64,000 nucleotides of DNA, from positions 13,516,001 through 13,580,000 of the forward strand of contig NC_086128.1 of the NCBI RefSeq assembly GCF_963921235.1. The letters are read 5' to 3'. The position numbers and the translations under genes were made by a program. The notes below the pieces were generated by a model, which saw only the letters and a program-made list of their open reading frames with translations, was not told where the DNA came from and ran no database searches. The stretch's first letter is position 1. Each line of letters opens with the position of its first letter. Positions 931 to 50,944 of the stretch are shown here, one piece after another. Source of the stretch: Mobula hypostoma. Its lineage: Eukaryota.

Positions 931-1057
931 CTTATGTTCCAAACTCAAGAATGGTCAATTCCACCATTTTTTGTTTTGTGGAGATATAAGTATATCACAG
1001 CGAAGTAAATGTCTAATCAGAAGGGATCTGTAAGATTGCTGCATAATAGCTAAACAG

Positions 1058-3430: not shown

Positions 3431-3707
3431 TCAGGTTTCCAGAAGCAGCATTATTTGATATCTAACAGTCCTAGCATTGCTTTTTACTCTTCCATATTTC
3501 CTCAATTATCCTCTTCTACTTACATCTCCTCCAGATAGATAAGCTGTAATGTACGAGCCTTAACCACCTTCTCTAAGCCAGCACCACCATCATTGATGTC
3601 AACGTCAACCCTATCACACACATTCCCTTTGTTCATTCCATCCCTTGTCACGAACGGGGTAAAGTTTAAAGGATATGTGCGGGGCAAGTTTTTTCACACA
3701 GAGTGGT

Positions 3708-10571: not shown

Positions 10572-12070
10572 GTGCCTCTCTAGCCATAGGCAAAGTCCTG
10601 GAGGACTGGTGAGTAGCTAATGCTGTTCCATTTATCAAGAAGGGAACCAGATAGAATCCTGGGAACTATAGACCGATGATTCTTACATCAATGGTAGGGA
10701 ATTTACTGGAGAGAATTCTTAGTGATAGGATATATGAGCATTTGGAAGACCATGGTCTAATTAGGAGGAGCCATCATGGTTTTGTCTGGGGCCAGTTGTG
10801 TCTTACTAACTTGATTGAGTTTTTTGATGAGATGACAAGTTTGATTGATGAAGGTAGAGCTGTGGATGTTGTCTGCATGGATTTTAGTAAGGTGTTTGAC
10901 AAGGTCCCTCATGGGAGGCTCATCCAGAAGATTAAAGTGCATGGGGTTCATGGTGAATTATGTATTTGGGTTGAGAACGGGTTTGCCCTAGAAGACAGAG
11001 GGTAGTGATCGAAGGAACTTATTCTAGTTGGAGGTCTGTAATTAGTGGTGCTCCTGCAGGGATTTGTACTGGGAACACTGCAGTTTTTGATGTATATAAA
11101 TGACCTGGATAAAAATGTAGATGGGTGGGTCAGTAAGTTTGCAAATGATATGAAGATTGATAGTGCTGTGGATAGCACAGGTGGCTGGCAAGGAGTACAA
11201 CATGATATAGATCAGTTGCAGATACGGGCAGAGAAGTGGCAAATGGAGTTTAACCTAGATAAATGTGAGGTGTTGCATCTTGGTAGGGCAAATGCAAGGA
11301 GACAGTGCACTGTCAAGGGCAAGATCCTTAACAGTATTACTGAGCATAGAGATCCTGGGATCCAAGTTCATAACCCCCTGAAAGTGGCTACACAGGTCAA
11401 TAAGGTAGTTAGGAAGGTTTATCGAATGCTTGTCTTTATTAGTCAAGGCATTGAGTTCAAAAATCAGGCAGTTATGTTGCAACTTTATAAAACTCTGGTT
11501 AGGCCACACCTGGAGTATTGCATACAGTTCTGGTCACCCCATTAAAGGAATGACGTCAAAGCTTTGGAGAAGATGAAGAGGTGGTTTACCAGGATGCTGC
11601 CTGGATTAGAGGGCATGTGCTATAACAAGATGTTGGACAAACTTGGGTTGTTTTCTGTGGAGTGGTGGAGGGTGAGGGGCAACCTGATAGAGGTCTATAA
11701 CATTGTGAGAGGCAGAGATAGAGTAGGCAGGGAGCATCTTTCTCCCAGGGTAGAAATGTCTAATACCAAAGGGCATGCATTTAATACTTGAGGGGGTCAT
11801 TTCAAAGTAGATGTGAAGGACAAGTTTTTTCACACAGAGAGGGGCAGGTGCCTGGAATGTGCTGTCTGGGGTGGTGGTAGAGACAGATACATTAGGAATT
11901 TTGAAGAGATGTTTAGATAGGCACATGAATGTGGGGGAAATGGAAGGATATGGACATTGTCCAGGCAGAAGGGATTAGTTTAGTTGGCCATTTGATTACT
12001 AATTTAGTTGGCCCAGTACAACATTGTGGGCCAAAGGGCAGGTTCCTGTGCTGTACTGTTCTATGTTCTA
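10572..12070 (+). mobile_element. CR1 LINE RT fragment inserted in an older LINE
   Basis: NYRP, LTNLIEFF, DFSKVFDKVPH, QGFVLG, KFAND, LVRPHLEYC; (gttctat) tail; older LINE sequence flanks both sides (10365-10571, 12071-12300). Confidence 0.92.
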
Positions 12071-13067
12071 TTATTCAATGGTATTACCATTGCCAAGTTG
12101 CCTGCATCCACTGACTACAAACTCAGCTAGATCAGCTGCATAAATATCATGGATACCAGAGCAGGTCAGAGGTTGGGCATCTTGTGAAACTGATTCATGT
12201 CTTGACAGCCCCAAGCCTTTCCATCATTTACAAAGGCACAAGTCATGAATGTGATGGAATAGTCTCCATAATGTACCATAGTTTTTCATTGCAATATTTA
12301 TGGGAGAGATTTCTGGTGTCACCCACTTGCCCACTCCTACCCTTCCACTGTGCTAGATTTGGGCCTAACTTCTTTAAATGAGGCCCGTGAGCTGATTAAT
12401 CCTCAGTCTCACTTTGTGAGTGAGATTTTTAAAAAACTGCGATTCTAGTTAACTTCTGGTTCGATATAGTATCAACCTCCAAGTTTATTAGGGGAGCCTC
12501 TACAGATTTATTTTTTCAATGAGTCAGTAAACTGCTTCTTCAGCTTTGGGAGCTCAGATTAAATAAACCCAACTTGGAGGGAGAACCTCCTCATTCTGAA
12601 GGCCAAAATGAGTCCTTGTATGCAATGACTTCATGCTGTTTCATTGCAGGAAGCAAGAGAGAAGAATGTTAGCTCATAGCAAAGTACCAAACTGAAAAAT
12701 AAATAATCAACAAAGAATTTTACAGAGAATGGTAGTAGTTATAAACTGGTCAAATAATGATTCAGAGACACAATGACAATGGGTCATTTACAATCAGTTA
12801 ATCAAACAATCTGGAATTCATATCAGTAATGTTGACCATGAAATTACTGGATTGTTGTTCTTTTCTTGGTCTGGACTACGGTAGCTCCAAACTGCCCTCT
12901 GAATTGACCTGGCAAACCACTCAATTCAAGGGTAGTGAGGCTTGGGCAACAAATGCTGATCTTACCAGTGTTATCCATATCCCACGAAAGAACTACAAAT
13001 AAGGTGGTTCCCTGCAACTTTCATGGACAATTTTGTTTGAACAACAAATGCAGATTATATAATTGGT

Positions 13068-14269
13068 ACAGTTGACGTTTCAGGCCAAGACCCTTCGTCA
13101 GGACTAACTGAAGGAAGAGCTAGAAAGAGATTTGAAAGTGGGAGGGGGAGATCCAAAATGATAGGAGAAGACAGGAGGGGGAGGGATGGAGCCAAGAGCT
13201 GGACAGGTGATTGGCAAAAGGGATATGAGAGGATCATGGGACAGGAGGCCCAGGGAGAAGGAAAAAGGGGGAGGGAGAAGGAAAAACCCAGAGGATGGGC
13301 AAGGGGTATAGTCAGAGGGACAGAGGGAGAAAAAGGAGAGTGAGAGAAAGAATGTGTGTTTATAAATAAATAACGGATGGGGTACGAGGGGGAGGTGGGG
13401 CATTAGCGGAAGTTAGAGAAGTCAGTGTTCATGCCGTCAGGTTGGAAGCTACCCAGACGGAATATAAGGTGTTGTTCCTCCAACATGAGTGTGGCTTCAT
13501 CCTTACAGTAGAGGAGGCCGTGGATAGACATGTCGGAATGGGAATGGGATGTGGAATTAAAATGTGTGGCCATTGGGAGATCCTGCTTTCTCTGGCGGAC
13601 AGAGCGTAGGTGCACGATCTGAACACCTATGCTCTATCCGCCAGAGAAAGCAGGATCTCCCAATGGCCACACATTTTAATTCCACATCCCATTCCCATTC
13701 TGATACGTCTATTCACAGCCTCCTCTACTATAAAGATGAAGCCACACTCAGGTTGGAGGAACAACACCTTATATTCTATCTGGGTAGCCTCCAACCTGAT
13801 GGCATGAACATTGACTTCTCTAACTTCCGCTAATGCCCCACCTCCCCCTCGAACCCCATCCGTTATTTGTATACACACATTCTTTCTCTCACTCTCCTTT
13901 TTCTCCCTCTGTCCCTCTGACTATACCCCTTGCCCATCCTCTGGGTTCCCCCCCTCCCCTTTTTCCTTCTCCCTGGGCCTCCTGTCCCATGATCCTCTCA
14001 TATCCCTTTTGCCAATCACCTGTCCAGCTCTTGGCTCCATCCCTCCCCCTCCTGTCTTCGCGTTTCATTTTGGATCTCCCCCTCCCCCTCCCCCTCCCCC
14101 TCCCCCTCCCCCTTTCAAATCTCTTACTAGCTCTTCCTTCAGTTAGTCCTGACGAAGGGTCTCAGCCTGAAACGCCGATTGTACCTCTTCCTGGAGATGC
14201 TGCGTTCGCCAGCAACTTTGATGTGTGTTGCTTGAATTTCCAGCATCTGCAGAATTCCTCATGTTTGTG
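13068..14269. mobile_element. Palindromic PLE insertion (two ~550-bp arms, GIY-YIG C-terminus and 3' end)
   Basis: Minus arm 13068-13612, plus arm 13619-14269; TSD ttatataattggt at 13055-13067 and 14270-14282; hammerhead motifs at 13070-13105 (-) and 14145-14180 (+). Confidence 0.93.
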
Positions 14270-14899
14270 TTATATAATTGGTGATGACTGTGAAGAATTA
14301 CCAAACCCAGCAGTATGGCTGACTTGAACCTCTAGCAGAAGAGATGTAGTCATTAAGATGGTTCACCAGTCTTGTTAGACCATAAGACACAGGAGCAGAA
14401 TTAGGCCATTCATCCATTGAGTCCTCTCCACCACTGGATTATGGGTGATTTGTTTTCCCTCTTGACCCTATTTTCCTCATAACCTTGGACACCTTTAGTA
14501 GTTGCTTCAACTTCATACATGTTAACTCAATTCTGTCCTGTTGGCAAAGTTGTATATGTTGCCCTCTTACTAAGCAATATGATTTCATAGAAATCATAAA
14601 ATACTACAAATAATAAGAATTCCTTATAATTACCTTATTGCCAAAGATGGCACTGCTGATAATATTGCATCTTTAAACTGAGCAAGGGACTAGTCATGGA
14701 GATGATCTATTGATAATTCTGGACTGCGATTAAAATTTTATCTGAAAATCAAACAGGTGTCCACCTACTTCAGCTACCACATAGCTCAATGGTTAACTGA
14801 AATGTACAGTGTGATAACGAGTTACATGGACCAGCATGTCTCGAATTCAATCTCTGTTGAGTTCATAGTACAGCAAAACTTTTTGTATCACTATGCGTG

Positions 14900-14901
<2 letters not shown>

Positions 14902-14939
<38 letters not shown>

Positions 14940-14940
14940 C
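14902..14940. repeat. (TG)n microsatellite ending in (GC)n
   Basis: Read directly. Confidence 0.95.
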
Positions 14941-17724
14941 TTTATTTATTCAGCTTAAACAAGCATAATCTGCCTTTTATGTCATTACTAAATTTCTGGT
15001 CTTCGAGAAAGGAGGCATTTCTGCCTCCAAAAATCACGGAGGATCTCCCCGCTGTTTGCTTTGGAAAAGTCATGGCTAGGGTGATCAGAGCAGTTAAGAA
15101 CTGGTCCCTGATTGGCAGTGAGGATTCCATCCACCGAGAGGCACAAAGGAAATGATTGCAACCATGTGATGACACCAAGAAAAATTCTAGTACAGAGTCA
15201 CAGCTCTGCATTATCAGCAAACTTTGATACATTGCACCTTATCTCCCGTTTAAGTCATTAATATAGAATGTAAATAGCTGGGCCCCAGTAGATTCTATAG
15301 CTTCTGTAGCTCTCCCTCTCCTCTTTTATTCAGCTTGGTTCTCCACTGAATCTGATTGCAGATTAGCAATAATTGCAATAGGTTTATGTGTCCTTGGGCC
15401 AGTGAAGGAGGGAGTAAGTCAGCTCAAAATACAGCTTTCCATTGACACCTACTGGAAAATATAGATGAGTAAACATCTGGTGAGGTCAGCATGTTTTGAT
15501 TAAATATGCCCCATCTGCATCATTACAAAGTAGCCTGCAGCCATCTCTTGTCTGGTCCCATACAAGAAGAGTAATGAAAAGCTTAAGGCATTTATGGTTC
15601 TGAATCAAATGATGGGTCTGACTGTCCAGGCCAATGTGGCAGTGAGTATATTCAAGGCACAGCTCAATAATCATCTGGTTATTATAGGCATCAAGGGCAA
15701 CAGTGTCAGTGCTCTAAAGTGGCTAAAGTAAAAATATGAATGGCAGAATTGACAGGAAGGGCTGAATGGTCTACTCCTGCTTCTATTTTTTTTTGTTCGA
15801 GTACAAGAACCCAAGAATAGTGTAAAAGAATACAGAGAGATAGGCAATATTTAAACAAAATGGAAATGTGCTTTAAGATCCCAGTGAAGGCCCGAAAACA
15901 ATTACTGGAGTAACAATTATACTTTGTCTGCTGAGGTGATTAGAAATGCAGTGGCTTCTTTGCAGCTGATGCAAACAACATTAAAGAAAGATGAGTTTTA
16001 TTGAACCACAGTCCTCACCAAAGCAAGGTTTCATTATAAATAGGATACTGAAAACCTCCCACTGTAATATGGATGAGGCAGTCAAGGGAGAAATATGCTT
16101 TTTTTTTAAACATAGGAGGCATTTGGTATTTAACTTAGAAACTACGTTGCATTTCTGTCCCATAATCATATTTTATTTCTAAGAGGAATAGTGCTCAGTT
16201 GTATAAAGTGCTGGTGAGGAATAAGTTACTGGGGTAAGGGTACATATTTTGTAGATATATACATCTGTTCCTGTCATGATATGGAGAGTATTAGTATAAC
16301 GGCTGTTGTAGCCCTTTCATCTATTCGAGTCACAAAAGAATTGTTAAACTAATAATTGTTGACTGGCGTGAAGAACCTTACATACCCAGAACTAGGAAAG
16401 TAAATCCATAAGGCAGCAAAAAGTTGACATTTGTAGGATAAAGTAAGATAATTTGCTCTAACTATATGCCTCAGGAAATACAAAAATAATCCATCCACTG
16501 CCTCACATTTTATTAAAAAAGCAAGGTGAAATAAGCTGCAGGACAATATTGGTTGCTTTTGTGATATTGTACCATGGATGAACGACAACTTTGTATCAAG
16601 AAAACCATTTTGTTGTCAATAGATTAATCAAATAGAGCAAAATTGAAAGGGAAGTTATAAGAATTAATGGCTCTCTGGCACTATGGAATATATCATTTGT
16701 TAGATCATAAAGTATTTTCTATCAATCCCACAAAGAGCTACAGCACTCTTACTTCCATTCCTAATAATGATCCAAATACTTTGAAAACCAAATATGGATT
16801 TATTGGACTCCATTCTACAGAATTTTACTCAAGGGATCTTTATTATTTAATACTACAAACTAGTTTGAATGGTTGAGCCACATTTTGAAATTTACAACAC
16901 TTGAGAACATTCAATAGTAGTAATAAATTGCATTGATTGTGAGTAACATTATTTGATTTTCTAATAGTATGGCATTTTCATTATATTACATTTCAATCCA
17001 TTTGGGAAGGAAATGATACAAACCAAGTTGAGATACATATATTACAGACCTGTTCTCCTCCATTTGTTGTTCATTCTAATCCTGTTAGCAACATTATTAT
17101 GTTCCGAGCAGGAGATTATCTTTCTATCTAGCCTACAGTTCCACACTATTTATCAATTTTCTTAATGTTTCTGAAACCTACAATTTCAGATCTCCTTTCC
17201 CAGTCATTTAGTCTTTCTTTAAAAGTATCCATTGCTTTCTGGTCTACCAGCCCCAGAGGTAATTTAGCTTACAACTCATGCTCTTATGACAAAATTTCTT
17301 ATTTTCTCTTGACATCCTTCAACCTTTTGCCCAATGTAAGAAAATACCCCGAGTTTGAACATTCCCTACCTCTGAAAAGTCCGCCATTAGTTTCAGGAAT
17401 CAACCTTGTGGATCTGACATATTCCAAGATGAGCTCTCAGTTTCGCTAACATCCAGACTGCCTTTCATTGTTCAGGGTAGTATGCTTCGTAAAAACCCCA
17501 GAGCATTGAAATTTACTTGACTCTTCTCAACATCAGCTAATAATAATTATGCACCATTTCAGAAGTGACAAATTACAGTAGAGTGCTGTAAAGGCCTTCA
17601 AATATGTTGTTGTCAGTTGTCCCTGGTACAGAAGAGAAGCACTTTGTGGTGTTATAACTGAACTACAGATGGCAAAATGACAAATGGGTATTTGAGGTAG
17701 ATGGCCAAGGTAACATGCAGTTAT

Positions 17725-28576: not shown

Positions 28577-31175
28577 GGACCTTTGTTATGGCATTCATTC
28601 ACATAATGCCAATATTTATTGTCTGTCCCTAATTGCTCTTGAACTAAGATGATTGTTAAGAGTCAATCACATTACTGATTACAGATCCGGGTCTGATTAC
28701 AGATCCAGGCCAGATTGAAGATGAATCTCAAAGCTGTATATAGAATACATAACTTGATAATAAATGTACTTTGAACTTTGATTGGAGAAGCTTTCTTCCC
28801 CTGAAGGACATCATTAAACCAAGTAATACAGTAATTTCAAGGCAGCCATTACTAAATACATACAGTATTTCACTTCTTTTACACACTACACATTGGTATA
28901 ATAAATGTTCCAGTGAACCCAGTAAGTTTAAGAGGAGTGGAAAATATACAAGCACTCAGGACCCTGACTCTGATTGCAAACCCAGCCTCTCGCCGAACCC
29001 ACAGCTCTGGCCGTACAGTCTGTTTGCACCCTGGACCCCCAGCTCACACCGGACTAATGAGTGAACCAGATACCAAATCATCAGAACGGGATGACAAATT
29101 ATTGGAATTTTACTATAATTTGAAAATAATAATGATAACGTAATGCAGGGTCATATGTTAACTCTGGATATTTGACACACTCAAAGGAATTAAAAATGGG
29201 GAAGTTGTAGGTCTATGGAGATGGGTCATAAATCTGTCATGACTCTGCCAAATAGAGAAATAAAGTCAAGGGGCTAAATAGTCTCCTCTAGATCCTCTCT
29301 TCCAGTGTTGCTGATGATGAATATTACCAACACCAGTGTTTGATTGGAGAGAAGAATGGATTCAACCAGATCTAGAGAAGGTAAGCAGTGAAAAATTCCA
29401 AAGGTAACAAATAATTCTTTAATTTTATGCCTTGCCCGAGGTGAAAATGGCAGCATGTAGGCACAGAACTTGTACTGTAGTAACTATGCAGCTTATTAAC
29501 ATTTTTATGTTATTAGGTACAGTTGCATTGCTGCTAGATTGGGTCTGAGGCCGATGATGGGGCAACCAACAAGAGGGAAAAACCTACTTAATCTCTTCCT
29601 CACCAGTCTACCTGCCGCAGATGCATCTGTCCACAATAGTATTGGTAGAAGTGCCCACTGCACAGCCCTCGTGGAGAGGAATCCCCATCTTCATGGTGAA
29701 AATACACTTCATCGTGTTGTGTGGTACAACCTAAATGGGGGCAGACTATGAGTAGATCTAGCAGCTCAGGATTGGGTATCCATGAGGTGCCATCGGCCAC
29801 CAGTTGTCATAAGGGGCGGCTGGGTGCGGACCCAAATGCAAGACACAGACACTGAAGTACTAGGAACAGGACAGGACTAGAGTTAGGGACGTGACTGGAT
29901 GCAGACTAGGAGCTGGGACAAGAACACAGACTTGGGCTAGGACATTGGCTAGGCAAGCGGGACCAGGACTAGGAACTGGGAACTAGGAGCCTGGGCTTGG
30001 ACTCCGAGCCAGAGACTGGTCAAGTCCCAGGTTCTGGGTCCTTGTCTCGGGCTCGGACCCCGGAACTAGGTGAGGATATGACATGGCTACCGGACTGGAC
30101 ATGGCTTGGATTCTTTGTGGCTTGGATATGGACTCCGAGCTAGAGACTGGGCAAGGACCCAGAATCTGGGTCTTGACTCTGGCTTGGACTCCAGAACTAG
30201 ACGAAGATATGACATGGCTGCAGGACTGGACATGGAACTCCTGCCCAGGACAAGGCACGCAGACAGGATGAGGTTCTTGGACGTGGCTTGGACAGGACGA
30301 GGTTCTTTTGGACGTGCCTTGGACAGGACGACGGAACCCCAGCACAGGGCTGGGCGAGGCACATGGACAGGATGAGAATACGAAGCCTTGACTAGGTTGA
30401 GGGAGACAGGAACGCAGAGCCTTGGTCTTGGGAGACAGGAACGTAGAATCTTGGTTGAGGGAGGACAGGAACGCAGAGACATGGAACACAGAGCCAGGAC
30501 CCATCCTTGGGAACAGGACTTGGGGCCAGGGCTCTACACAGAGTCAGGACCCCTCCTAGGGAGCAGAACGTAGGGCCAGCACTCGTACACAGAGAGACAG
30601 TTCCCAACACAAGGTAGCAGCAAACGGTCAGACCTACCTAGGAAGGCGTGGACACAGAAGGATCCCAACACAAGATAGCGGCAAACGGCCGGACCTACCT
30701 AGTGAAGGTGTGGACACAAAGACAGTTCAAAACAATGATGGACAGTTCCTCATCTTGCTCCAGCAGTTGAACTCGACAGTGGTGCAGGTGAAGATTGCAG
30801 GCAAGGCTCCAGGGCAAGGCAAGGCTCCAGACACAGGTTGCAGCTCAAGACTTCAGGAGGAAGGGGCAGAGAAGGAATTCAGACAAGGGGTCTGGACAGG
30901 AACAATCCAACAACTGAAGCTTCTTCTTGTGTTGTTTTATGGCGGTTGGGAAACCAGCTTTTAGGTGCATTACCACCACCTGCTACACTGGAGTGTGGAT
31001 CATTGGATAAACAGGAGAAGGGAAAAGAATTGTATTCCCTATATTCTATATAATAAACCTGAGTCTTTCAGATACTTCATGATACGGATCTGTATTTCTC
31101 TTGAATTCCCACTTAAAATGTCTTCTATACCCACATCAGTTTATCTTAAGTGCTCCTAACATCTTCACTTTTTTT

Positions 31176-34100
31176 TTAATAATACTTCTTACATTTTATC
31201 AATACATGTTCAACTGTTTCTGGTTGATTACAGTATTCACACAACCCAGTTGGATGTTTCCCTATTTTGTGTAATGTAAAATTAAGACTAGTGTGTCCAA
31301 TTCTCAAATGACTGATGATCACTTCTCTCTTTCTATATCCACTTGACAATCTTTTGTATCTGACTTGCCTCTGTATTTTGTACAGTTGTCTCCCTGTTTC
31401 ACTCTCATCCCAGTGCTTCTGCCATGTCTCCTCAATACGTGTTTTTATAATGCCCTTGACTTCCACTTTGCTAAGAGGGATCTGGACCTCTATTATAGAT
31501 GATTTGAGCGATTGTTTAGCCATATTATCCACCTTTTCATTACCCTCCACTCCACAATGAGCAGGAACCCAAAGAGAGCTTACTTCTACCCCATTTTTGG
31601 TCAGTGTATGTAACTTGCATAAAATCTCCAATAAAATATCCTGTCTACTTTCTGATTTCCTTGATTTGATCGAGGTTAATGCAGACAAACTGTCTGAACA
31701 GACCACAGCCTTTTTGGTATTATTTTCTTCTATCCAAGATAATGCTCTCAATATTGCCATCAATTCTGTTGTATGCACTGATAAATGGTTTGATGTCCTT
31801 TTCCTGATACTAGTTTTGCACTGAGGAATGTAGACTGCAATACCTATCTGGCCAGATCTAGGGTCTTTTGATCCATCCATAAATATTACAAGTTCATTTC
31901 TAAAATGCAAGTCTATATATTCTTGTACTATCTATTTGATTCCATAGTTAGACTTTTTTTAAAAAAGTTGTTGCAGTTTTTTTTATCTACTGTATGCATT
32001 GTAAAGAGCCATGGAGGAACATCAGATATTGGAACTGTAAGGTTATATTCCATTTTTGTGTTGCTGCATCCCCAATCCATCCAAAGCTATTATAACTTGA
32101 CTTATTATGTTCCCAGCGGTCTTTTAATATAGCTTTAGCTGGATGTGAGTAGTTATGTCCTATGATATTAACCCAGTAATTTAGCATTAGCTTTACTCTT
32201 CCAAGTCTTAAAGGCATTTCCCCCATTTCGACCTGAGGAGCTGATATAGGTGATGTTCTGAATGCACCACTACATATCCTGAGGGCCTGGGCTTGCTCAT
32301 CATCCAGCATTTTTAAATTACTTTCTGCAGCTGACATGTACGCTACACTTCCATAATCCAATGTAGCCCTCATTAAAGCTTGATAAATATTGAATAGCGA
32401 TATCCTGCTCGCACCCCAGTCCTGTCCGGCAAGATCCCTCAATAAGTTATTTATTTTTTTACATTTCTTTGTAATTTTCTTGATTTGCTTTTTCCATGCA
32501 AGTTTCTCATCAAGTAACAAACCAAGGAACCAAATTACCTTTACCTGCTCTAATTTTTGTTCATATAATTTCACAGAAACTGGGTTGTGAATTCTTGAGC
32601 AACATATCACTTGTGACTTACTTGTAGACAATTTGAAACCCCATTTATTTGCCCACTCCTCCACTTTATTTATTGCATCTTGAATTTCCTTTGTATATAA
32701 ATTAAATTTCTCCCCCTCACCCATAAAGCCCCATCATCTGCATACAAGGATTTCCCCTCACTATGTCCAACTTGCGCAAATATGTCATTTATCGCTATGG
32801 AAAATAGTAACGGACTGCAGACACTACCTTGTGGTGTTCCATTTTCAACCAAATAGGTCCTGGAGTACTGTTTCCACCTTGACTTGAATTGCTTGACCAA
32901 AAAGAAAGCCTGGAACCCAATTATATAATTTTCCTTCCACCCCTAGTTCTTTCAATTTAATTAACACTCCCTCTTTCCAGAGCATATCGTATGCCTTTTC
33001 TATGTCAAAAAATACTGCCAGGACCATTTCTTTATTTGTTTGAGCCTTCCTAATTTCAGATTCCAAGCTAAGTATTGAATCTACTGTAGTTCTTCCTTTA
33101 CGAAAACCACTTTGGTAGGGAGAAATAAGATTTCTTTTTTCTAGAAAGTATGTAAGCCTATCAGTTATGATTCATTCCATAAGTTTACCTAGCTGTGAAG
33201 TTAGTGCAATTGGTCTATAATTTGTTGGGATGAATCTTTACTGGGTTTTAATACTGGAACAACAACAGAAGTGCACTTCTTGATAAATGCTTCAGTATTA
33301 TACCCCATACTTGATCCTTCCCAGGAGAAGTTGGTCGCGCATTCGTAATGGCTCTTTCTATTTCTGTTATGCTAATGGGTGTATCCAGTACTTCTTCTGA
33401 CGTTGCTCTTTTGTCCGTAATTCCTGAATTTTGCTTAAGCCTCTCCTCCCTTTGCTGTCTAGCCTCGACTGTCAAATTCTCCGAGCTATGTATGTTTACA
33501 AAAGTCTTTGCCAATATTGCTGTTTTTTTCTACCTTGTTAATTGCCATTTTGTCCTTACTTTTTAAGCACAGGAATCTCTTTACTACTTCTTATACCATT
33601 CATTTTCCTTATCATGCCCCATATTTCAGACAGTTGAGTTTCTCTTCCAATTTTGTTACAATACTGTCTCCAAAATGCTCGCTTTGCTTGTCTGATTGTT
33701 TTCCGAACTTCTGCTTGTGCCCTTTTATATTGTATTAATGTTTCTACTGAATGTTGTCTTTTTAACATTTTAAATGATTTATTTCTTGCTTTTACACTTC
33801 TACTACATTCACAATTCCACCATAGAACAGTTTTCCTCTTTCCTGTACCTTTACTTTTCGGAATTGTTTTTACTACCGAATTTATAATTGCTGTGACCAA
33901 TTTATCATTCATTTCTTCTATATCTGATATATTTTCATTGAAAATCTTTGTGCATCTTACTTCACTTCTTTTTTGAAATATCTCCCACTCTGCCTTATTT
34001 AGTTTCCACCTTGACACTCTAGATCCTACATTTTGTTCTATTTTAACCTGAATCCTTGTGAGTATGGGATAGTGATCACTTCCTACTGTAGTTTGTTTCA

Positions 34101-34690
34101 ATACGTTCCAAGTACTGATTCCTGCTAATTCTCTACTTGCAAATGTTAAATCTATTGCAGTTTATGTTTTGGGATATATTATATCTTGTACCTCCTCCAT
34201 TATTTATACATATCAGTTTTTCATCACCTAGAAATTCTTCTATCACTAATCTGTTTTCATCCACATTTTTACATCCCCATCGTGTACTGTGTCCATTGAA
34301 ATCCCCACACCATATTATTTTCCCTTTCATCCCACCACCCAATTTGTTTAATGTATCTTTGCTTAGTCTTCTACATGGATTACAATAGTTTATTATTACC
34401 AAACTTTCTCTGCCTATCCATATTCTGATTATTATTGATTCATACTTCTACCCTATGTTGACTATATTATATCTCATCCCACTGGCTATAAATATTGCTA
34501 CTCCTCCACCATTGCCATTGCTTCTCTCCCTCCTAATTGCTGTATATCCTTGTAAAACAAAATCTAATTGTGGGTTCAACCATGTTTCTTGTATACATAG
34601 AATCCGAGGTTTTTCCTTAAGTTCTGATACACATTTCTTAAATTCTTGACCATTTGCGATGACTCCTTGCATTCCATTACAAAATATATA
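31176..34690 (-). pseudogene. Nimb/I ORF2 (AP endonuclease, reverse transcriptase, RNase H), frameshifted
   Basis: LCIQETW, GDFNGH, SDHYPI; FFDIEKAYD, GTPQGSVCSPLLF, YADD; IFMDGSK, ELMAI, SDSLSAL, WVPAHCGVEGNEKVD; CEYC..PETVEHVLIKC. Confidence 0.92.
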
Positions 34691-34696
34691 TTGCTA

Positions 34697-35867
34697 TTAA
34701 GATCCCACCTCCCCTGCCTGTGATCTGTTTGATCCTCCATTCAGCGTTTTTTCAACTGCTTCCCACCTAAGCCCTGTAATACCAAGATATTTTTCTGCAG
34801 ACGACTATAATTTTAATTTTTTCTGTTCTTTTGTCTGTTTGCGCTGAACAGTTAATTGCATCTACCATAAACAGTACGAAATCTTTTCTATTCATTATTA
34901 GTGTGTCCCTATTTATCATATTACAGCCCTCACAGTTCACTGGTTTATTATTCCCTGTACTTGTTTGCTTAGTAGCTTTCTCCTTTTCAGCAAAACCTTT
35001 CACTGCCTCAGCGTAACTAATCCCTCGAGTTACTTTTACATATTGTATCTCAGCTGCCTTCTTGCTATAAATGCACCCTTGATAAGCTGCACTGTGTTCC
35101 TCGCCACAATTGCAACATTTCAGCCTAGCTCCCACCTCACATTTCCCATATTCATGTTCTCCAGTGCATCTTCCACATCTTTGTTTCCCTCTGCGGACCG
35201 CCGCAACGTGCCCGAATTTCTGACATTTAACACATCTTAAAGGCGGTGGTATATATATTCTGACCTCATAACACATATACCCTAAGTAAACTTTAGTCAG
35301 CAATCTCTCTTCATCAAAGTTAATCATCACCGATAAACTATCACACTTTTTCCCATCTCTTGTAACTTTCAAACGTTTGGCCTCAATAATCTTTGCTCCT
35401 TTTATGTTCTGTTTAATCTCATCCATAGTAACTTTTGTTGGTATCCCCAAAATAACTCCTCTAGTCCACTTTCTATTGTCGAGTATTGAGCATTGTACTT
35501 TTTTTTGCTGTCTATTTTATTTAATCTTATCACTTTGCCTTGTTGAGCACTATCCCGACATATCACTAATAGCGATCCATTTCGTAATACCTTGGCTCTT
35601 ATGACTTCGCCTACAAGTTTGTTGATTACCTTCGTCAAATAAATTGGGTTCCAATCCCTGAAAGATGCCCCCTCTTCGCTCAGTTTTATAATTGCTTTAA
35701 TCTCATCTTCTTTCCATTCTTTTGCTATCCTTTTTCGATTATCCCCTGACCCCTCAGAATTTTACTGCTCATACCTGTTTTCTTTTCTTACTCTTTACAC
35801 TCCATTCCGCTTTCTTGCCATCTTCCATCTCTAACTCACTTTCCGAATTGTCACTTCCTCCTGCCAT
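34697..35867 (-). pseudogene. Nimb/I ORF1 gag-like nucleic acid chaperone, frameshifted
   Basis: PPLRCVKCQKFGH, RCGRCTGEH and KCCNCGEEH zinc knuckles; likely start MAGGSDNSESE at 35867. Confidence 0.88.
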
Positions 35868-36061
35868 CCTCCATCTATTCACAGTCTAGATGTTTAGCTA
35901 ACCGCCGTCGTCCTCCGAAAAACCAGCAAAAATCCAATGCAAAACACTGCAGGCAGAACTCCAGTCGTCTCTCCCCCCCAGCCCAGCTCAGCAACTGAAG
36001 CTGAAGCAAGGAGCTATTTACGTAGCCAGCCCAAAATGTGAATCAGCTGCCTCAATTAGAG

Positions 36062-36865
36062 CAGGGGTCCCCAACCTTTTTTGCACCGCGGACCAGTTTA
36101 ATATTGACAATATTCTTGCAGACCGGCCGACCAGGGGTGGGGGTGGTGTTCAAGTAGGGTTAAACTCACCTCACCTCAACGTCTTTTACAGTTAGTGTTG
36201 TCAACTTTCTCACTCCCAAATAAGGGACAAAAGTAGCAGTGAAATCCCGGGACACTTCTGTTTACCCCAGGAAAGACTACCATGACCATGAAGCCTTGCG
36301 TGGGCACCTGTGTGCGCATGTGTGAGTGACATGTGCATATGTGATGTTCGCATGCGCGGATATGCCGATTTTTTTCCCCCCACAAATCGGTTTTGGTTTG
36401 ATCTTCCCGACTACACTGTACATACATTATTTCTACTTTATATAGGCTGTGTATTTATCATATCATTCCTGCTTTTACTATATGTTACTGTTATTTTAGG
36501 TTTTATGTATTATTTGGTAGGTTATTTTTTGGGTCTGAGAATGCTCAAAAATTTTTTCCCATATAAATTAATGGTAATTGCTTCTTCGCTTTACGCCATT
36601 TCGGCACGAAAGGTTTCATAGGAACGCTCTACATTAGCAGGGGAAATACGGGACAAGGGCAGCCCTGTATGGGACAAGCCAATTTAGCCCAATATACAGG
36701 ATGTCCCAGCAAATACAAAACAGTTGGCAACCCTATGTTCAAGTTCAACAGTGTGTGACAGGGAATGAGGAAAGGTGCAGCTGACCCATATCGTTTCCTC
36801 ACGGCCTGGTAGCACATGCTCTGCAGCCCGGTGCCGGTCTGTGGCCCGGTGGTTGGGGAACACTG
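36062..36865. mobile_element. hAT (Charlie-like) MITE
   Basis: TIRs CAGGGGTCCCCAACC / GGTTGGGGAACACTG (13 of 15 match); 8-bp TSD aattagag at 36054-36061 and 36866-36873. Confidence 0.92.
36155..36735. mobile_element. Second hAT (Blackjack-like) MITE nested in the first
   Basis: Ends TAGGGTT / AACCCTA, with a longer TIR copy tagtgttgtcaact at 36193-36206; 8-bp TSD tgttcaag at 36147-36154 and 36736-36743. Confidence 0.8.
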
Positions 36866-37098
36866 AATTAGAGAACCCAACAGAAAAAGGGAAAACCAGA
36901 AAACCTGGAATAAGGACCAGAATCCGGACTTTTACGGACCAGACCATGACAGTAACCCCCTCTATGGGAGCCTCCTGGCGACCCAAAAGGCTTCCCCAGA
37001 TTATGGATGACACGGGCGGGTGGGGGGACATTCAACAGGAGAGAACCCAGGATAGCGAGAGATAAACAACAGTGTCTGTGTTGCTGGTTCCACGTCTA

Positions 37099-37110
37099 GC
37101 TGGACTGTTC
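37099..37110 (-). promoter_or_regulatory. Self-priming primer-binding site of the mini-Gypsy element
   Basis: GAACAGTCCAGC directly after the 5' LTR, complementary to LTR sequence at 38077-38088, which starts 30 nt downstream of a CATAAATA box (38111-38118). Confidence 0.7.
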
Positions 37111-38334
37111 TGTCATAAGGGGGCGGCTGGGAGCAGACCCAAATGCAAGACACGGACACTGAAGTACTAGGAACAGGTTAGGACTAGAGACTAGAGTTAG
37201 GGACGTGACTGGATGCAGACTAGGAGCTGAGACAAGAACACAGACTTGGGCTAGGACATTTACTAGGCAAGCAGGACCAGGACTAGGAACTGGGAACTAA
37301 AAGCCTGGGCTTGGACTCCGAGCCAGAGACTGGACAAAGACCCAGGACCTGGGTCTTGTCTCAGGCTCGGACCCCGGAACTAGGCGAGGACACAACATGG
37401 CTACCGGACTGGACATGGCTTGGGTTTCTTCGAGGCTTGGGTATGGACTCCGAGTTAGAGACTGGGCAAGGACCCAGAACCTGGGTCTTGACTTGGGCTC
37501 GGACCCCAGAACTAGACAAAGACATGACGTGGCTACAGGACTGGACGTGGAACTCCTGCACAGGACACGGTGCACGGACAGGACAACAGAACCCCAGCAC
37601 AGGACTGGGCGTGGTACTCCTGGGCTGGGCAAGGCACATGGACAGGACAGGAACGCAGAGCCCTGGTCTAGAGGGCGACAGCAACACAGAGCCCTGGTCT
37701 GGTGGGCGACAGGACTAGAGGCCAGGGCTCTACAGAGTCAGGACCCCTCCTAGGGAGCAGGACATAGGGCCAGGACATACACAGAACACAGAGAGACAGT
37801 TCCAAACACAAGTTAGCAGCAAACAGCCAGACCTACCTAGCAAAGGCATGGACACAGATACAGTTCCCAACACTAGGTATCAGCAAACAGCCAGACCTAC
37901 CTAGCAAAGGCATGGACACAGAGACAGTTCAAAACAACAATAGACAGTTCCTTATCTTGCTCCAGAAGTTGAACTTGACAGCAGTGCAGGCGAGGCGAGG
38001 CTTCAGACACTGGCTGCAGGGCAACACTTCAGGAAGAAGGGGCAGCATAGGGATTCAGACAGGGAGGTTTGGATAGGAACAATTCAGCAACTGAAGCTGA
38101 ACCAAGGAGCTATTTATGTAGCCAGCCCAAAATGTGAATCAGCTGCCTCAATTAGAGCACCCAACAGAAAAAGGGAAAACCAGAAAACCTGGAATAAGGA
38201 ACATGGACCAGACTGTGAACCGGAATCCTGATTTCATGGACCGGACCATAACACCAGTGGGCAACAGAATTTTACTTAACTACAGTCTGCGAGCTGATGG
38301 CGTGGCATACCTCCCACTCTTACCAATTTTTGTC

Positions 38335-38690
38335 AGTGTACCATAGAAAGCATTCCATCTGGATGCATAACGGCCTGCCTGTGACCACAAGAAACTGCAG
38401 AGAGATGTGGACACAGCTCAGCACGTTGCAGGAACCAGCCTCCCCTCTATAAACTCAGTCTGTACTACTCACTGTCTCAGTAAAGCAGCCAGCATAATCA
38501 AAGATCTCAAACACCCCAAACATTCTCTAGTCTCCCCTCCCCCACCAGGCACACGATACAAAAGCCTGAAAACATGTACCACCAGGCTCATGGGCAGCTT
38601 CCACCCCACTGTTATCAGACTCTTGAATAGACCTCTTGTACCATAAGATGGGCTCTTGGCCTCACTATCTACCTTACTATGATCTTGCAG
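38335..38690 (+). mobile_element. Rex1/Babar 3' fragment
   Basis: KAASIIKD..HP.HSL...GTRYKSLKTCTTRL..SF.P.VIRLLN. Confidence 0.75.
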
Positions 38691-38691
38691 T

Positions 38692-40340
38692 ACTACACTT
38701 GCCCCTACACCTCCTCCCTCACCACCATTCAGGGCCCCAAACAGTCCTTCTAGGTGAGGAACATGTCACCTGAGAGTCTGTTGGGGTCATCTTACTGTAT
38801 CTGGTACTCCTGGTGTGGTCACATCAGTGAGACCAGACCCACATTGGGGGGTCCACTTCATTGAGAACCTCTGGTCCATCTGCCACATTCCTCTGGCGAC
38901 ATCATCCAGGTAGCAAATCTCTCAAAATATTTCATCTTGTCCATGCCTTCTGCTTGTTCTTTTTTGTCTTGTTTGTGTTAAGGAAACTGTTGGAGCCTGT
39001 GACGTACAGTTTGGAACTCGATCGAAGGACCCAGCGTTGTGCTGTGTCCAGAGAGCTGCCTCATGGAGATTAGAGATGGGGGCTGAAAAGGATCAATAGC
39101 ACGAGTTGACTGGTGGAAAAGATCAGAGAGATGAGGCACCGGGTCACGAGTCACTCCATCTCGGAGCGGCAAGGAAGATTGAAGCATTGAGGTGAATGCG
39201 GAGGGAGTCAGCGATGGCTCCTGACGGAGTTCACTGGGGTAACGATGATCAGCAGCCGGATCAGCGCGTTCAGACCGGGTCAGCGGTCACTCTTCACAGC
39301 AGAACGATGTTCATGCGGCTGCTTTCCTCATATGCAGATAAAAAGATGTTTCCCATATTCTGAGATTTATGAGAATATAGGACTGTACTTTATGTTGGTT
39401 TCCTTCAGTATTTCAGCATTTTCTTTCTTGTGAACAATTGGCGGGGGGGGGTGATCTGTTAATTTTTTGTATGTAGGGCGGTTGGGAGTTTTGGTGCTAT
39501 TGTTGCTGTTTATTTCTGCGGGTGAGAGGGTCGGGGATTGCTACTGTTGCTGTTTTTTTCCCCTGAGTGTGAGGGGGTCGAGGTTGCTATTGTCGCTGTT
39601 TATTTCTGCGAGTGAGGGGGTCGGGGATTGTCACTGTCGTTTTTACTGTGGGGAAAAGTTGGGAGTTTTTGGCTCTGCGAGTTTTGTATCCTTTTTCTAT
39701 CGTGCCGGCGGGGGGAGAATGGTGGAGTTGATGACAACTCCCATGGTCTGTATTTAATGACTATCTGGAGTGGACAAACATCACCGTTGTATTGTAAATA
39801 CACACTCAGACAATAACATGTACTTTTGAACAAAATGCGGGATTTCCAGGTGTCCACCCATTTCAATTTGACTTCCCATTCTCATTCATACATGTCATTC
39901 CATGGCCTCCTCAGATTTGGAGGAACAACACCTCATATTCCATCTGGGTAGCCTCCAACCTGATTGCATGAACATCAATGTTTCCACTTCCCCCTTCTCT
40001 CGTGTTCCATTCCCCATTCTAGTTACTCTCTCACCTCTTCTCTTCTCTTCATCTGCCCATCATCTGTCCCTCTTCTTTCCCTTTCTTCCATGGTCATATC
40101 ATTTTCCACTTATCACCTCCCAGCTTCCCCACCTATCACCTGCCATCTTGTACTCTTACACCTCCCCAAACTTCTCATTCTTGGTTCTGTCCCCTTCCTT
40201 TCCAGTCTGAAGAAGGGTCTCAGCCCAAAAAGTCGACTGTTTATTCCTGCTCATAGTTGCTGCCTGACTTGCCGAGTTCCTCAAACATTTAGTGTGTGTT
40301 GCTTAAGATTTCCAGCATCTGCAGAATCTCTTGTGTTTAA
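38692..40340 (+). mobile_element. Older PLE fragment split by a ~0.95-kb non-coding retroelement (38886-39829)
   Basis: PLE GIY-YIG sequence stops near 38885 and resumes near 39830; the insert is related to 52221-53220. Confidence 0.75.
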
Positions 40341-40963: not shown

Positions 40964-42683
40964 CGGAAACATGAGAAAATCTGCGGATGCTGAAAATTCA
41001 AGCAACATACACAGAAAATGCTGGTGAACGCAGCAGGCCAGGCAGCATCTATAGGAAAAGGTACAGTCGACGTTTCGGGCCAAGACTCTTCATCAGGACT
41101 AACTGAAAGAAGAGATAGTAAGAGATTTGAAAGTGGGAGGGGGAGGGGGAGATCCGAAATGATAGGAGAAGACAGGAGGGGGAGGGATGGAGCTAAGAGC
41201 TGGAGAGGTGATTGGCAAAGGGGATACAAGGCTGGAGAAGGGAGAGGATCATGGAACGGGAGGCCTAGGGAGAAAGAAAGGGAGAGGGGAGCCCAGAGGA
41301 TGGGCAAGGAGTTGTAGCAAAAGAGATAGAGGGAGAGAAAAAATAAAAGGGGGGAAATAAATAATAAATAATGGATGGGGTACGAAGGGGAGGTGGGGCA
41401 TTAGCTGAAGTTAGAGCAGTCAATGTTCATGCCATCAGGTTGGAGGCTACCCAGATGGAATATAAGGTGTTGTTCCTCCAACCCGAGTGTGGCTTCATCT
41501 TGACAGTAGAGGAGGCCGTAGATAGACATATTAGAATGGGAATGGGACATGGAATTAAAATGTGTGGCCACTGGGAGATCCTGCTTTCTCTGGCGGACAG
41601 AGCGTAGGTGTTCAGCGAAATGGTCTCCCAGCCTGCATCGAGTCTCGCCAATATATAGAAGGCCACATCGGGAGCACCGGACGCAGTATATCACCCCAGC
41701 CGACTCACAGGTGAAGTGTCGCCTCACCTGGAAGGACTGTTTGGGGCCCTGAATGGTGGTGAGGGAGGAAGTGTAGGGGTATGTGTAGCACTTGTTCTGC
41801 TTATAAGGATAAGTGCTGGGAGGGAGATCGGTGGGAAGGGATGGGAGGGGACGAATGGACAAGGGAGTCGCGTAGGGAGCAATCCCAGCGGAAAGTAGAG
41901 GGGGGGGGAGGGAAAGATGTGCTTAGTGGTGGGATCCCGTTGGAGGTGGCGGAAGTTACGGAGAATTATATGTTGGACCTGGAGGCTGGTGGGGTGGTAG
42001 GTGAGCACAAGGGGAACCCTATTCCGAGTGGGGTGGTGGGAGGATGGGGTGAAACCAGATGTGCATAAAATGGGAGAGATGCGTTTGAGAGCAGAGTTGA
42101 TGGTGGAGGAAGGGAAGCCCCTTTCTTTGAAAAAGGAGGACATCTCCCTCGTCCTGGAATGAAAAGCCTCATCCTGAGAGCAGATGTGGTGGAGACAGAG
42201 GAATTGCGAGAAGGCGATGGCATTTTTGCAAGAGACAGGGTGAGAAGAGGAATAGTCCAGGTAGCTGTGAGAGAACATTGACTTCTCTAACTTCCATTCA
42301 TGCCCCACCTCCCCTTCATACCCCATCTCTTATTTATTATTTATTATTATTTTTTCTTTTCCCCTTTTTTCTCCCTCTGTCCCTCTCGCTACAACTCCTT
42401 GCCCATTCTTTGGGCTCCCCTCCCCCTTTCTTTCTCTCTAGGCCTCCCATCCCATGATCTTCTCTCTTCTCCAGCCTCGTATCCCTTTTGCCAATCAACT
42501 TTCCAGCTCTTGGCTCTATCCCTCCCCCTCCTGTCTTCTCCTATCATTTTGGATCTCCCCCTCCCACTTTCAAATCTCTTACTAACTCTTCCTTCAGTTA
42601 GTCCTGACGAAGGGTCTCGGCCCGAAACGTCGACTGTACCTCTTCCTATAGATGCTGCCTGGCCTGCTGCATTCACCAGCATT
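40964..42683. mobile_element. PLE with inverted 3'-end copy (minus 40964-~42272, plus ~42273-42683)
   Basis: HSYLDYSSSHP through GIY-YIG on minus strand; TSD aattctgtaaaat at 40951-40963 and 42684-42696; hammerheads at 41065-41100 (-) and 42600-42635 (+). Confidence 0.93.
42600..42635 (+). ncRNA. Minimal hammerhead ribozyme motif (consensus-like copy)
   Basis: AGTC CTGACGA A GGGTCTCGGCCC GAAA CGTC GACT. Confidence 0.8.
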
Positions 42684-49607: not shown

Positions 49608-50944
49608 TTATCTACTGATATCTACTATAAGCCTAAGGACTCTCACAACTACCTGGATTATTCCTCTTCTCACCCTGTCTCTTGCAAAAATGCCATCCCC
49701 TTCCCGTAATTCCTCCGTCTCCGCCGCATCTGCTCTCAGGATGAGGCTTTTCAGTCCAGGACGAGGGAGATGTCCTCCTTTTTTAAAGAAAGGGGCTTCC
49801 CTTCCTCCACCGTCAACTCCACTCTCAAACGCATCTCTCCCATTTCACGCACATCTGCTCTCACTCCATCCTCCCGCCAACCCACTAGGAATAGGGTTCC
49901 CCTGGTCCTCACCTACCACCCCACCAGCCTCCAGGTCCAACATATAATTCTCCGTAACTTCCGCCACCTCCAACGGGATCCCACCACTAAGCACTCCCCC
50001 CACTCTCTGCTTTCCACAGGGATCGCTCCCTACGCTACTCCCTTTTCCATTCATCCCCCCCATCCCTCCCCACTGATCTCCCTCCTGGCACTTATCCTTG
50101 TAAACAGAACAAGTGCTACACATGCCCTTACACCTCCTCCCTCACCACCATTCAGGGCCCCAGACAGTCCTTCCAGGTGAAGCAACACTTCACCTATGAG
50201 TCGGCTGGGGTGATACACTGTGTCCGGTGCTCCTGATGCGGCCCTTCTATATATAAGTGAGACCCGACGCAGACTGGGAGACCATTTCGCTGAACACCTA
50301 CGCTCTGTCCGCCAGAGAAAGCAGGATCTCCCAGTGGCCACACATTTTAATTCCACGTCCCATTCCCACTTTGATATGTCTATTCACGGCCTCCTCTACT
50401 GTCAAGATGAAGCCACACTCAGATTGGAGGAACAACACCTTATAGTCCATCTGGGTAGCCTCCAACCTGACGGCATGAACATTGACTTCTCTAACTTCCG
50501 TTAATGCCCCACCTCCCCCTCGTACCCCATCCGTTATTTATTTATTTATTTATCAATTTATTATTTTATATATATATATGTGTGTGTGTGTGTATATATA
50601 TTCTCTCTCTTTCTCACTCTGTCCCTCTCACTATACTCCTTGCCCATCCTCTGGGCTTCTCCCTCCTCCTTTCTTTCTCTCTAGGCCTCCCGTCCCATGA
50701 TCCTCTCCCTTCTCCAGCCTCGTATCCCTTTTGCCAATCAACTGTCCAGCTCTTAGCTCCATCCCTCCCCCTCCTGTCTTCTCCTATCATTTCAGATCTC
50801 CCCCTCCCCCTCCCACTTTCAAATCTCTTACTACCTCTTCTTTCAGTAAGTCCTGACGAAGGGTCTCGGCCCGAAACGTCGACTGTACCTCTTCCTATTG
50901 ATGCTGCCTGGCCTGCTGCGTTCACCAGCAATTTTTATGTGTGT
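49608..50944 (+). mobile_element. PLE (RT C-terminus, GIY-YIG, 3' end with hammerhead at 50849-50884)
   Basis: Starts LSTDIYYKP..SH.YLDYSSSHP; TSD cttccaaattc at 49597-49607 and 50945-50955. Confidence 0.92.

What the first reader, a model, noticed from the sequence alone, without database searches (positions are those of the whole stretch)
37070..38118. tRNA-independent self-priming structure preserved in a coding-less mini LTR element
Seen: on the minus strand the 5' LTR is followed not by a TGG-type tRNA PBS but by GAACAGTCCAGC (37099-37110). The LTR has a CATAAATA box (38111-38118). Thirty nt downstream of its start begins GCTGAATTGTTC (38088-38077), which pairs with that PBS at 11 of 12 positions including one G-U. 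The 3' LTR version (30900-30911) pairs at all 12 with G-U pairs. An inverted repeat also brackets the PBS (37070-37084 vs 37145-37161; the other LTR's version at 29838-29854 matches 12 bp perfectly). Known: Tf1/sushi-group elements prime reverse transcription with their own transcript 5' end plus a U5-leader stem. Inference: all cis signals survived loss of gag-pol, with a ~980-nt loop between primer and PBS.
Basis: partly seen in the sequence, partly recalled or inferred. Interest (0 to 1): 0.8.

Follow-up and report, generated by a model that had tools for sequence, protein, structure and literature searches.

The report
Coding-less LTR element with self-priming signals
This is an old, gene-less copy of a jumping-gene family in an animal genome; its RNA looks built to start its own reverse copying by folding its front end back onto a site just behind the first repeat, as the yeast Tf1 and fish sushi elements do, which makes it a neat but unsurprising addition to a known mechanism.

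Summary
On the minus strand lies a real LTR retroelement. It has a 5-bp target duplication (ACTGG) and TG..CA LTRs of about 1.14 kb. LTR-A is 38253-37111. LTR-B is 36951-29805, split by a hAT-like MITE and a LINE. The internal region is only 159 nt, from PBS to polypurine tract.

The 12 nt abutting LTR-A carry no tRNA-type TGG. They pair with a 12-mer that starts 30 nt after the only TATA-like box in the LTR.

In this copy the pairing is 11/12, which alone is not significant (12-20% of 12-mers do as well). But LTR-B, and 95% or more of family contigs in three organisms, read the pairing letter at the one mismatched place. That gives 12/12, which about 1% of 12-mers reach. A second stem of 12+3 bp joins U5 to the leader and brackets the PBS. 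Its one mismatch is likewise peculiar to this copy.

Diverged copies with the same short core exist at roughly 60-190 per genome.

Not shown: the transcription start, a poly(A) signal, the coding partner, and linked primer/PBS covariation.

Verdict: Tf1/sushi-type self-priming is the best reading (about 0.65). It is a new member of a known kind. First readers noted the same signature more than ten times elsewhere in this genome.

The parts
38254..38258 (-). 5' target-site duplication ACTGG
   Evidence: Same 5-mer directly after LTR-B at 29804-29800
37111..38253 (-). LTR-A (5' LTR), 1143 nt, starts TGTTAT, ends ATGACA
   Evidence: Alignment with LTR-B. Contigs with unrelated flanks break off exactly at 37111 and 38253 in three organisms
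38111..38118 (-). TATA-like box CATAAATA (CGTAAATA in LTR-B at about 36022-36015)
   Evidence: Only TATA-like motif on the sense strand of the LTR; same spacing to the primer in LTR-B
38077..38088 (-). Candidate self-primer, GCTGAATTGTTC; inferred start of R
   Evidence: Pairs 11/12 with the PBS. At 38084 this copy reads A where LTR-B and 95-100% of laid contigs read G, which pairs. Starts 30 nt after the TATA-like box
37788..37915 (-). Two 64-nt tandem units inside the LTR
   Evidence: the repeat finder family D3
37291..37583 (-). Two ~131-nt tandem units inside the LTR
   Evidence: the repeat finder family D1 and self-BLAST; by far the most abundant LTR segments in the runs
37145..37161 (-). 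U5 arm of the U5-leader inverted repeat
   Evidence: Pairs with 37084-37070: 12 bp, then a 2-nt bulge, then 3 bp. The one mismatch (37154) is peculiar to LTR-A
37099..37110 (-). Primer-binding site GAACAGTCCAGC, abutting the LTR end; no TGG
   Evidence: no majority difference listed here among family contigs
37070..37084 (-). Leader arm of the U5-leader inverted repeat
   Evidence: One of only two internal 12-mers with a 12/12 complement in LTR-B; a perfect stem of 12 bp or more never appeared in 3000 shuffles
36952..37110 (-). Whole internal region, 159 nt, no ORF
   Evidence: Diverged contigs span it from LTR end to LTR start in three organisms, at about 60-190 copies by depth
36956..36963 (-). 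Polypurine tract AGAGGGGG, 4 nt before LTR-B
   Evidence: Read directly; fixes the element's orientation
29805..36951 (-). LTR-B (3' LTR) in three pieces: 36951-36866, 36061-35989, 30921-29805
   Evidence: Junction alignments; 83-97% identity to LTR-A by segment
36062..36865 (-). Nested hAT-like MITE with CAG..CTG inverted ends and 8-bp TSD CTCTAATT
30922..35988 (-). Nested LINE (CCHC-type ORF1, RT and RNase H) with 14-nt TSD (36002-35989 and 30921-30908)
29800..29804 (-). 3' target-site duplication ACTGG

Best explanation
This is a fossil copy of a non-autonomous LTR retrotransposon family. Proteins supplied in trans by a coding relative would have copied it.

Inferred mechanism: transcription starts about 30 nt after the TATA-like box in the 5' LTR. 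The first ~12 nt of that RNA fold back over about 970 nt of R-U5 and pair with the 12 nt that abut the LTR. A 12+3-bp U5-leader stem holds the site in shape. The partner's RNase H cuts after the duplex, and the freed 3' end primes minus-strand DNA, as in Tf1/sushi elements. No tRNA is used.

Shown here: the element's anatomy, the two complementarities and their better state in other copies, and the recurrence of the same short core in many diverged copies.

Inferred only: the start site, the cut, the partner, and the mobility itself.
For: - Anatomy of a true LTR element: 5-bp TSD, TG..CA ends, PPT, 159-nt core.
- No TGG in the first 18 nt after the LTR. No tRNA or Rfam match in the element.
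- PBS and primer pair 12/12 with LTR-B's 12-mer (-16.4 kcal/mol).
- At 38084, 95-100% of contigs in four runs from three organisms read the pairing letter.
- Of 148 internal 12-mers, only two have a 12/12 complement in LTR-B. These are the LTR-adjacent PBS and the leader arm of the U5 stem.
- 12/12 occurs for about 1% of random 12-mers, and the match sits exactly 30 nt after the only TATA-like box.
- The U5-leader stem of 12 bp was never reached in 3000 shuffles.
- The primer:PBS duplex is in the minimum-energy fold of the two natural fragments.
- Contigs 10-17% different from this copy span LTR end, core and LTR start in three organisms.
- Literature: Tf1 self-priming needs a central primer:PBS duplex flanked by PBS-adjacent duplexes (PMC10085805). 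Tf1/sushi elements occur in vertebrates (PMC4600332, PMC6317226, both citing Butler et al. 2001).
Against: - The start site is not mapped. The RNA-labelled run gave contigs only and shows no step at 38088.
- In a fold of the whole 1049-nt leader of this copy, the long-range duplex has only about 5% probability.
- No canonical poly(A) signal follows the predicted start, so the R/U5 border is undefined.
- U3 would be only 165 nt, and the tandem repeats would lie in R-U5, which is unusual.
- The third 'pretzel' duplex is only 4 bp.
- No partner was found.
- Conservation of the PBS in a majority call says nothing about selection.
- Internal tRNA fragments as primer could not be excluded, for want of host tRNA sequences.
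Confidence: 0.65

Rival explanations
1. The complementarity is fortuitous or serves another purpose. The family is primed by a host RNA, such as an internal tRNA fragment or another small RNA, that pairs with the LTR-adjacent sequence.
For: 11/12 with G.U is common by chance. The start site is unmapped. Half-tRNA priming exists in other LTR groups (PMC6317226). Host tRNAs could not be compared (one search found none in the window).
Against: Pairing is 12/12 in LTR-B and the family majority. It ends exactly at the LTR border on one side, and its other strand starts 30 nt after the TATA-like box on the other. There is no TGG near the border. The only other 12/12 match is the expected U5-leader stem.
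Confidence: 0.15
2. The signals are inherited relics only. The short-core copies multiplied by tandem or segmental duplication and LTR-LTR recombination, not by their own reverse transcription.
For: Parts of the LTR are 100 times more abundant than the core, and the LTR holds tandem repeats. Another first-reader note speaks of arrays of such units (untested).
Against: This copy has its own 5-bp TSD and stands alone between unrelated flanks. The LTR ends join many unrelated flanks.
Confidence: 0.12
3. The self-primer is real but internal to the RNA. Transcription starts upstream, for example at the initiator-like TCAGTT with A at 38092, or in flanking DNA. RNase H trims the RNA to make the primer.
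For: The TCA(38092)GTT motif lies 4 nt before the duplex. Nothing fixes the start at 38088.
Against: None specific. This is a variant of the main reading.
Confidence: 0.08

Closest known systems
Tf1/sushi-group Ty3/gypsy elements (Tf1, Tf2, Tj1, sushi-ichi and vertebrate relatives)
   Same: No tRNA PBS. The PBS abuts the 5' LTR and is complementary to about 11-12 nt at the predicted RNA 5' end. A U5-to-leader stem brackets the PBS. These elements occur in vertebrates (PMC10085805, PMC4600332).
   Different: No gag-pol at all. The LTR is 1.14 kb, with about 970 nt between primer and PBS, against roughly 0.1-0.2 kb in Tf1 (from memory). The third flanking duplex is weak. Clade membership is untestable without pol.
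TRIM (terminal-repeat retrotransposons in miniature)
   Same: Two terminal direct repeats around a core that holds little but a PBS and a PPT. Non-autonomous and multicopy (PMC6934838).
   Different: TRIMs are under 1 kb, with 100-250-bp repeats and a tRNA-type PBS. Here the LTRs are 1.14 kb, the element was about 2.4 kb before the nested insertions, and the PBS is not tRNA-type.
LARD and other non-autonomous LTR derivatives
   Same: Long LTRs, no coding capacity, dependence on a partner.
   Different: LARDs have a long non-coding internal domain (from memory). Here the internal domain is 159 nt.

Membership tests
LTR retrotransposon (generic) | Direct long terminal repeats with TG..CA ends and short inverted termini | tested here: met
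   TGTTAT/TGTCAT ... ATGACA in both LTRs
LTR retrotransposon (generic) | 4-6-bp target-site duplication | tested here: met
   ACTGG at 38258-38254 and 29804-29800
LTR retrotransposon (generic) | Polypurine tract just before the 3' LTR | tested here: met
   AGAGGGGG at 36963-36956
Self-priming (Tf1/sushi-type) elements | No PBS complementary to a tRNA 3' end | tested here: met
   No TGG within 18 nt of the LTR end. The first TGG, at +19, would need a tRNA without the conserved C61 (established knowledge). No tRNA-like Rfam match. Internal tRNA fragments not testable.
Self-priming (Tf1/sushi-type) elements | PBS next to the 5' LTR complementary to about 11 nt in the LTR | tested here: met
   11/12 in LTR-A, 12/12 with LTR-B and the family-majority letter
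Self-priming (Tf1/sushi-type) elements | That complementary stretch is the very 5' end of the mRNA | not testable with these tools
   Only inferred from the 30-nt spacing to the TATA-like box. The runs are contigs, which cannot show RNA starts.
Self-priming (Tf1/sushi-type) elements | Two further duplexes between PBS-adjacent sequence and the LTR ('pretzel', U5-IR-like) | tested here: inconclusive
   One strong duplex: 12+3 bp, 37161-37145 with 37084-37070. The other is only 4 bp after a 1-nt bulge, and only in the LTR-B version.
Self-priming (Tf1/sushi-type) elements | RNase H cut at the end of the primer duplex | not testable with these tools
   Needs biochemistry
Tf1/sushi clade of chromoviruses | RT/IN phylogeny within the clade; integrase chromodomain | not testable with these tools
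   The element has no coding sequence. No gypsy pol in the window. No partner could be fetched.
TRIM | Total length under 1 kb with 100-250-bp terminal repeats | tested here: not met
   LTR 1143 nt; the element was about 2.4 kb before the nested insertions
TRIM | PBS complementary to a tRNA | tested here: not met
   See above

The most novel reading that the evidence does not exclude
A family of roughly 60-190 coding-less LTR elements per genome, shared by at least three organisms, multiplies by self-primed reverse transcription across a loop of nearly 1 kb. Because in this mechanism the PBS is recopied from the primer at each cycle, primer and PBS would co-evolve. That would make the family a natural minimal set of cis signals for self-priming in a vertebrate, and the first non-autonomous family described with it.
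Probability: 0.45. Interest if true: 0.5.

Novelty: new member of a known kind. Interest (0 to 1): 0.35.

Why it matters
Self-priming has been shown by experiment only for Tf1 and a few relatives. In vertebrates it rests on sequence inference in coding elements. A gene-less family that keeps only LTRs, PBS, a U5-leader stem and a PPT would define the minimal cis requirements. It would show that the fold-back tolerates a loop of nearly 1 kb, and its many copies would give a ready data set for primer/PBS covariation. For annotation, LTR finders that demand a tRNA-type PBS will miss or mislabel such elements. The gain is modest, because the mechanism and the idea of non-autonomous derivatives are both established.

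Tried and rejected
- Protein search with an ORF lying inside the LTR, hoping to fetch other copies through called 'proteins': no hit.
- Two exact-pattern scans of metagenome contigs, one for the LTR-end/PBS junction and one for the abundant U5 end: both blank.
- Second run search for RNA with raw reads: only contigs, so no start-site evidence.
- Whole-leader fold: the 5' end is unpaired in the minimum-energy structure and the long-range duplex has about 5% probability. This is not decisive at this length, and this copy carries the mismatch.
- Plus-strand orientation rejected. The purine tract and the TATA-like box fit the minus strand only. On the plus strand the site before the 3' LTR is not purine-rich.
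- TGG at +19 (37092-37090) as a displaced tRNA PBS rejected. It lies too far from the LTR, and the implied tRNA 3' end lacks conserved features.
- AGTAAA at 37264 as a poly(A) signal rejected. LTR-B and nearly all contigs read other letters at 37262 and 37261.
- The idea that the whole stretch from 37110 to 30922 is the internal region rejected. It consists of a MITE, a LINE and the front of LTR-B.
- Rfam and tRNA scans: nothing.
- Papers by Levin and by Lin & Levin (1995-1998) are not held. Their content is cited through later open papers.

Full report
**1. What is there**

Reading the minus strand and comparing the window with itself shows a complete LTR retroelement.

- LTR-A runs 38253-37111 (1143 nt). 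It starts TGTTAT and ends ATGACA.
- A 159-nt internal region follows (37110-36952). It holds no ORF and ends in a purine tract, AGAGGGGG (36963-36956), 4 nt before the next LTR.
- LTR-B starts at 36951 (TGTCAT) and ends at 29805 (ATGACA). Two later insertions break it.
  - The first is an 804-bp element with CAG..CTG inverted ends and an 8-bp duplication, CTCTAATT (36865-36062). It is hAT-like.
  - The second is a LINE of about 5.07 kb (35988-30922). It has a CCHC-type ORF1 and RT and RNase H domains, and it is flanked by a 14-nt duplication (36002-35989 and 30921-30908).
- The whole element is flanked by ACTGG on both sides (38258-38254 and 29804-29800).
- The LTRs are 83-97% alike, depending on the segment. 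The copy is therefore old.
- The purine tract and the TATA-like box fix the sense strand as minus.

**2.

All coordinates and pair counts are right.

- The 12 nt that abut LTR-A (37110-37099) pair with 38088-38077 at 11 of 12 places: one A.C mismatch and one G.U.
- The matching 12-mer of LTR-B (30911-30900) pairs at all 12 places, with two G.U.
- The primer candidate starts 30 nt after the C of CATAAATA (38118). That is the only TATA-like motif on the sense strand of the LTR.
- The inverted repeat around the PBS is real. 37161-37150 pairs with 37081-37070 over 12 bp, with one mismatch at 37154 in LTR-A and none with LTR-B's arm. After a 2-nt bulge, 37147-37145 pairs with 37084-37082.

**3. Is it more than chance?**

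- The 11/12 match is not significant by itself. 8.7% of shuffled LTRs contain such a match, and 12-20% of real 12-mers from the core or from elsewhere in the window find one.
- 12/12 is rarer: 0.45% of shuffles and about 1% of real 12-mers.
- Of the 148 12-mers of the internal region, only two have a 12/12 complement in LTR-B. One is the 12-mer that abuts the LTR. The other is the leader arm of the inverted repeat.
- A perfect stem of 12 bp or more between the U5 end and the leader never appeared in 3000 shuffles.
- Adding that the primer sits at the canonical distance from the TATA-like box (about 1% of positions), the joint signature is unlikely to be accidental.

**4. Other copies**

Contigs of four public runs, from three differently labelled organisms, were laid on 36850-38400 at 80% likeness or more.

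- About 11,000-15,000 contigs fit in each of the three genomic-scale runs (X1, X4, X9) and 441 in the small RNA-labelled run (X17).
- Contigs that run on into unrelated sequence break off exactly at 37111 and at 38253. This confirms the LTR ends.
- Summed word depth over the internal region is about 1,000-6,700. Contigs that look single-copy have a depth of about 12-35. That implies about 60-190 copies of the core per genome.
- Contigs 10-17% different from this copy span the path from LTR start (36951) through the core into the LTR end. So the short core is a trait of the family, not an accident of this locus.
- At 38084, the site of the A.C mismatch, 95-100% of the depth in all four runs reads the letter that pairs (G on the minus strand), as LTR-B does.
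- At 37154, the mismatch in the U5-leader stem, about 98-100% likewise read the pairing letter.
- No majority difference is listed inside the PBS or inside the leader arm. The table is truncated, so this is only weak evidence.
- Both defects are therefore peculiar to this fossil copy.
- The T at 30910 in LTR-B lies in one copy of the LINE's duplication, and the other copy has C. That G.U pair is therefore probably secondary.

**5. Folding**

- The 12-mer duplexes have -11.9 kcal/mol (LTR-A) and -16.4 kcal/mol (LTR-B).
- Folding the first 80 nt of the presumed RNA together with the 126 nt around the PBS, as two natural fragments, puts the primer:PBS duplex in the minimum-energy structure for both LTR versions. 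With LTR-B's version it is extended by 4 bp after a 1-nt bulge.
- In the whole 1049-nt leader of this copy, the long-range duplex has only about 5% probability and the 5' end is unpaired. Predictions at that length are weak, and this copy carries the mismatch.

**6. Not a tRNA site**

- No TGG occurs in the first 18 nt after the LTR.
- The TGG at +19 would imply a tRNA 3' end without the conserved C61 (established knowledge of tRNA structure).
- ARAGORN and Rfam find nothing in the element or the window.
- Host tRNAs were not available, so priming by an internal tRNA fragment is not excluded.

**7. How it most likely works**

Shown:
- the anatomy;
- the two complementarities;
- their intact state in most copies;
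- the recurrence of the short core.

Inferred:
- RNA starts at about 38088, or a few nt upstream at the initiator-like TCAGTT.
- Its first ~12 nt pair with the PBS across about 970 nt of R-U5.
- The U5-leader stem shapes the site.
- A partner's RNase H cuts after the duplex, and its RT extends the freed end.

This matches the mechanism described for Tf1. There, a central primer:PBS duplex is flanked by two duplexes between PBS-adjacent and LTR sequence, the 'pretzel' structure (PMC10085805). The mechanism is held to be common to the Tf1/sushi group, including vertebrate members (PMC4600332 and PMC6317226, both citing Butler et al. 2001).

**8. What does not fit or is missing**

- No canonical poly(A) signal lies after the predicted start. 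The only AGTAAA (37264) is peculiar to this copy.
- U3 would be just 165 nt, and the tandem repeats (64 nt x2, ~131 nt x2) would lie in R-U5.
- The third 'pretzel' duplex is weak.
- The RNA-labelled run shows LTR sequence but no step in coverage at 38088. Being contigs, it cannot show starts.
- No coding partner was found in the window, through protein search or in metagenome scans.
- Primer and PBS lie about 980 nt apart, while the contigs are 150-700 nt long. The covariation test could therefore not be done.

**9. Comparison and novelty**

- It works like a Tf1/sushi-type self-primer. Membership of that clade cannot be tested without pol.
- It is not a TRIM in the strict sense. Its LTRs are too long and its PBS is not tRNA-type (PMC6934838). 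It is not a LARD either, because the core is tiny.
- A full-text search found no paper describing a non-autonomous LTR family with self-priming. Even so, it is a natural extension of known biology.
- First readers have noted the same signature more than ten times on other DNA of this genome, two of them claiming compensatory changes. Those notes are unchecked and were not used as evidence.

**Verdict:** It is a new member of a known kind, of moderate interest.

Noticed in passing
window 30922-35988 (minus strand): A nearly full-length LINE nested in LTR-B. It has a CCHC-type ORF1 and broken RT and RNase H ORFs (Pfam RNase_H 1e-15). It has a 14-nt target duplication and no poly(A) tail at its 3' end.
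   Followed up: partly
window 36062-36865: An 804-bp non-coding element with CAG..CTG inverted ends (CAGTGTTCCCCAACC / GGTTGGGGACCCCTG) and an 8-bp duplication, CTCTAATT. It is a hAT-like MITE nested in LTR-B.
   Followed up: partly
window 37111-38253, by 52-nt bins: Segments of one LTR differ up to about 400-fold in summed contig depth. The ~131-nt tandem units (up to about 420,000 in X1) and the last 50 nt of U5 (about 190,000) are far more abundant than 37682-37733 (about 1,000), 37994-38045 (about 3,100) or the core. The LTR is therefore a mosaic shared among many subfamilies or satellite-like arrays.
   Followed up: no
window 38203-38369: A 173-nt contig of run X4 (organism B) spans the LTR-A/flank junction with only 3 differences. 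This very insertion is therefore present in that organism's sample too.
   Followed up: no
window 6462-7385 (+) and 41401-41862 (-): ORFs with GIY-YIG endonuclease domains, typical of Penelope-like elements. Related ~130-nt repeats lie at 6994-7123, 38689-38818, 41663-41792 and 50112-50235.
   Followed up: no
window 39495-39645: A short tandem array of ~45-nt units (CTGTTGCTGTTT...GGGGTCGGGG) in sequence near, but not adjoining, the element (which ends at 38258).
   Followed up: no
window 37111-38088 (minus strand): No AATAAA or ATTAAA anywhere after the predicted start in the LTR, so the family's poly(A) signal and R/U5 border are unexplained.
   Followed up: partly
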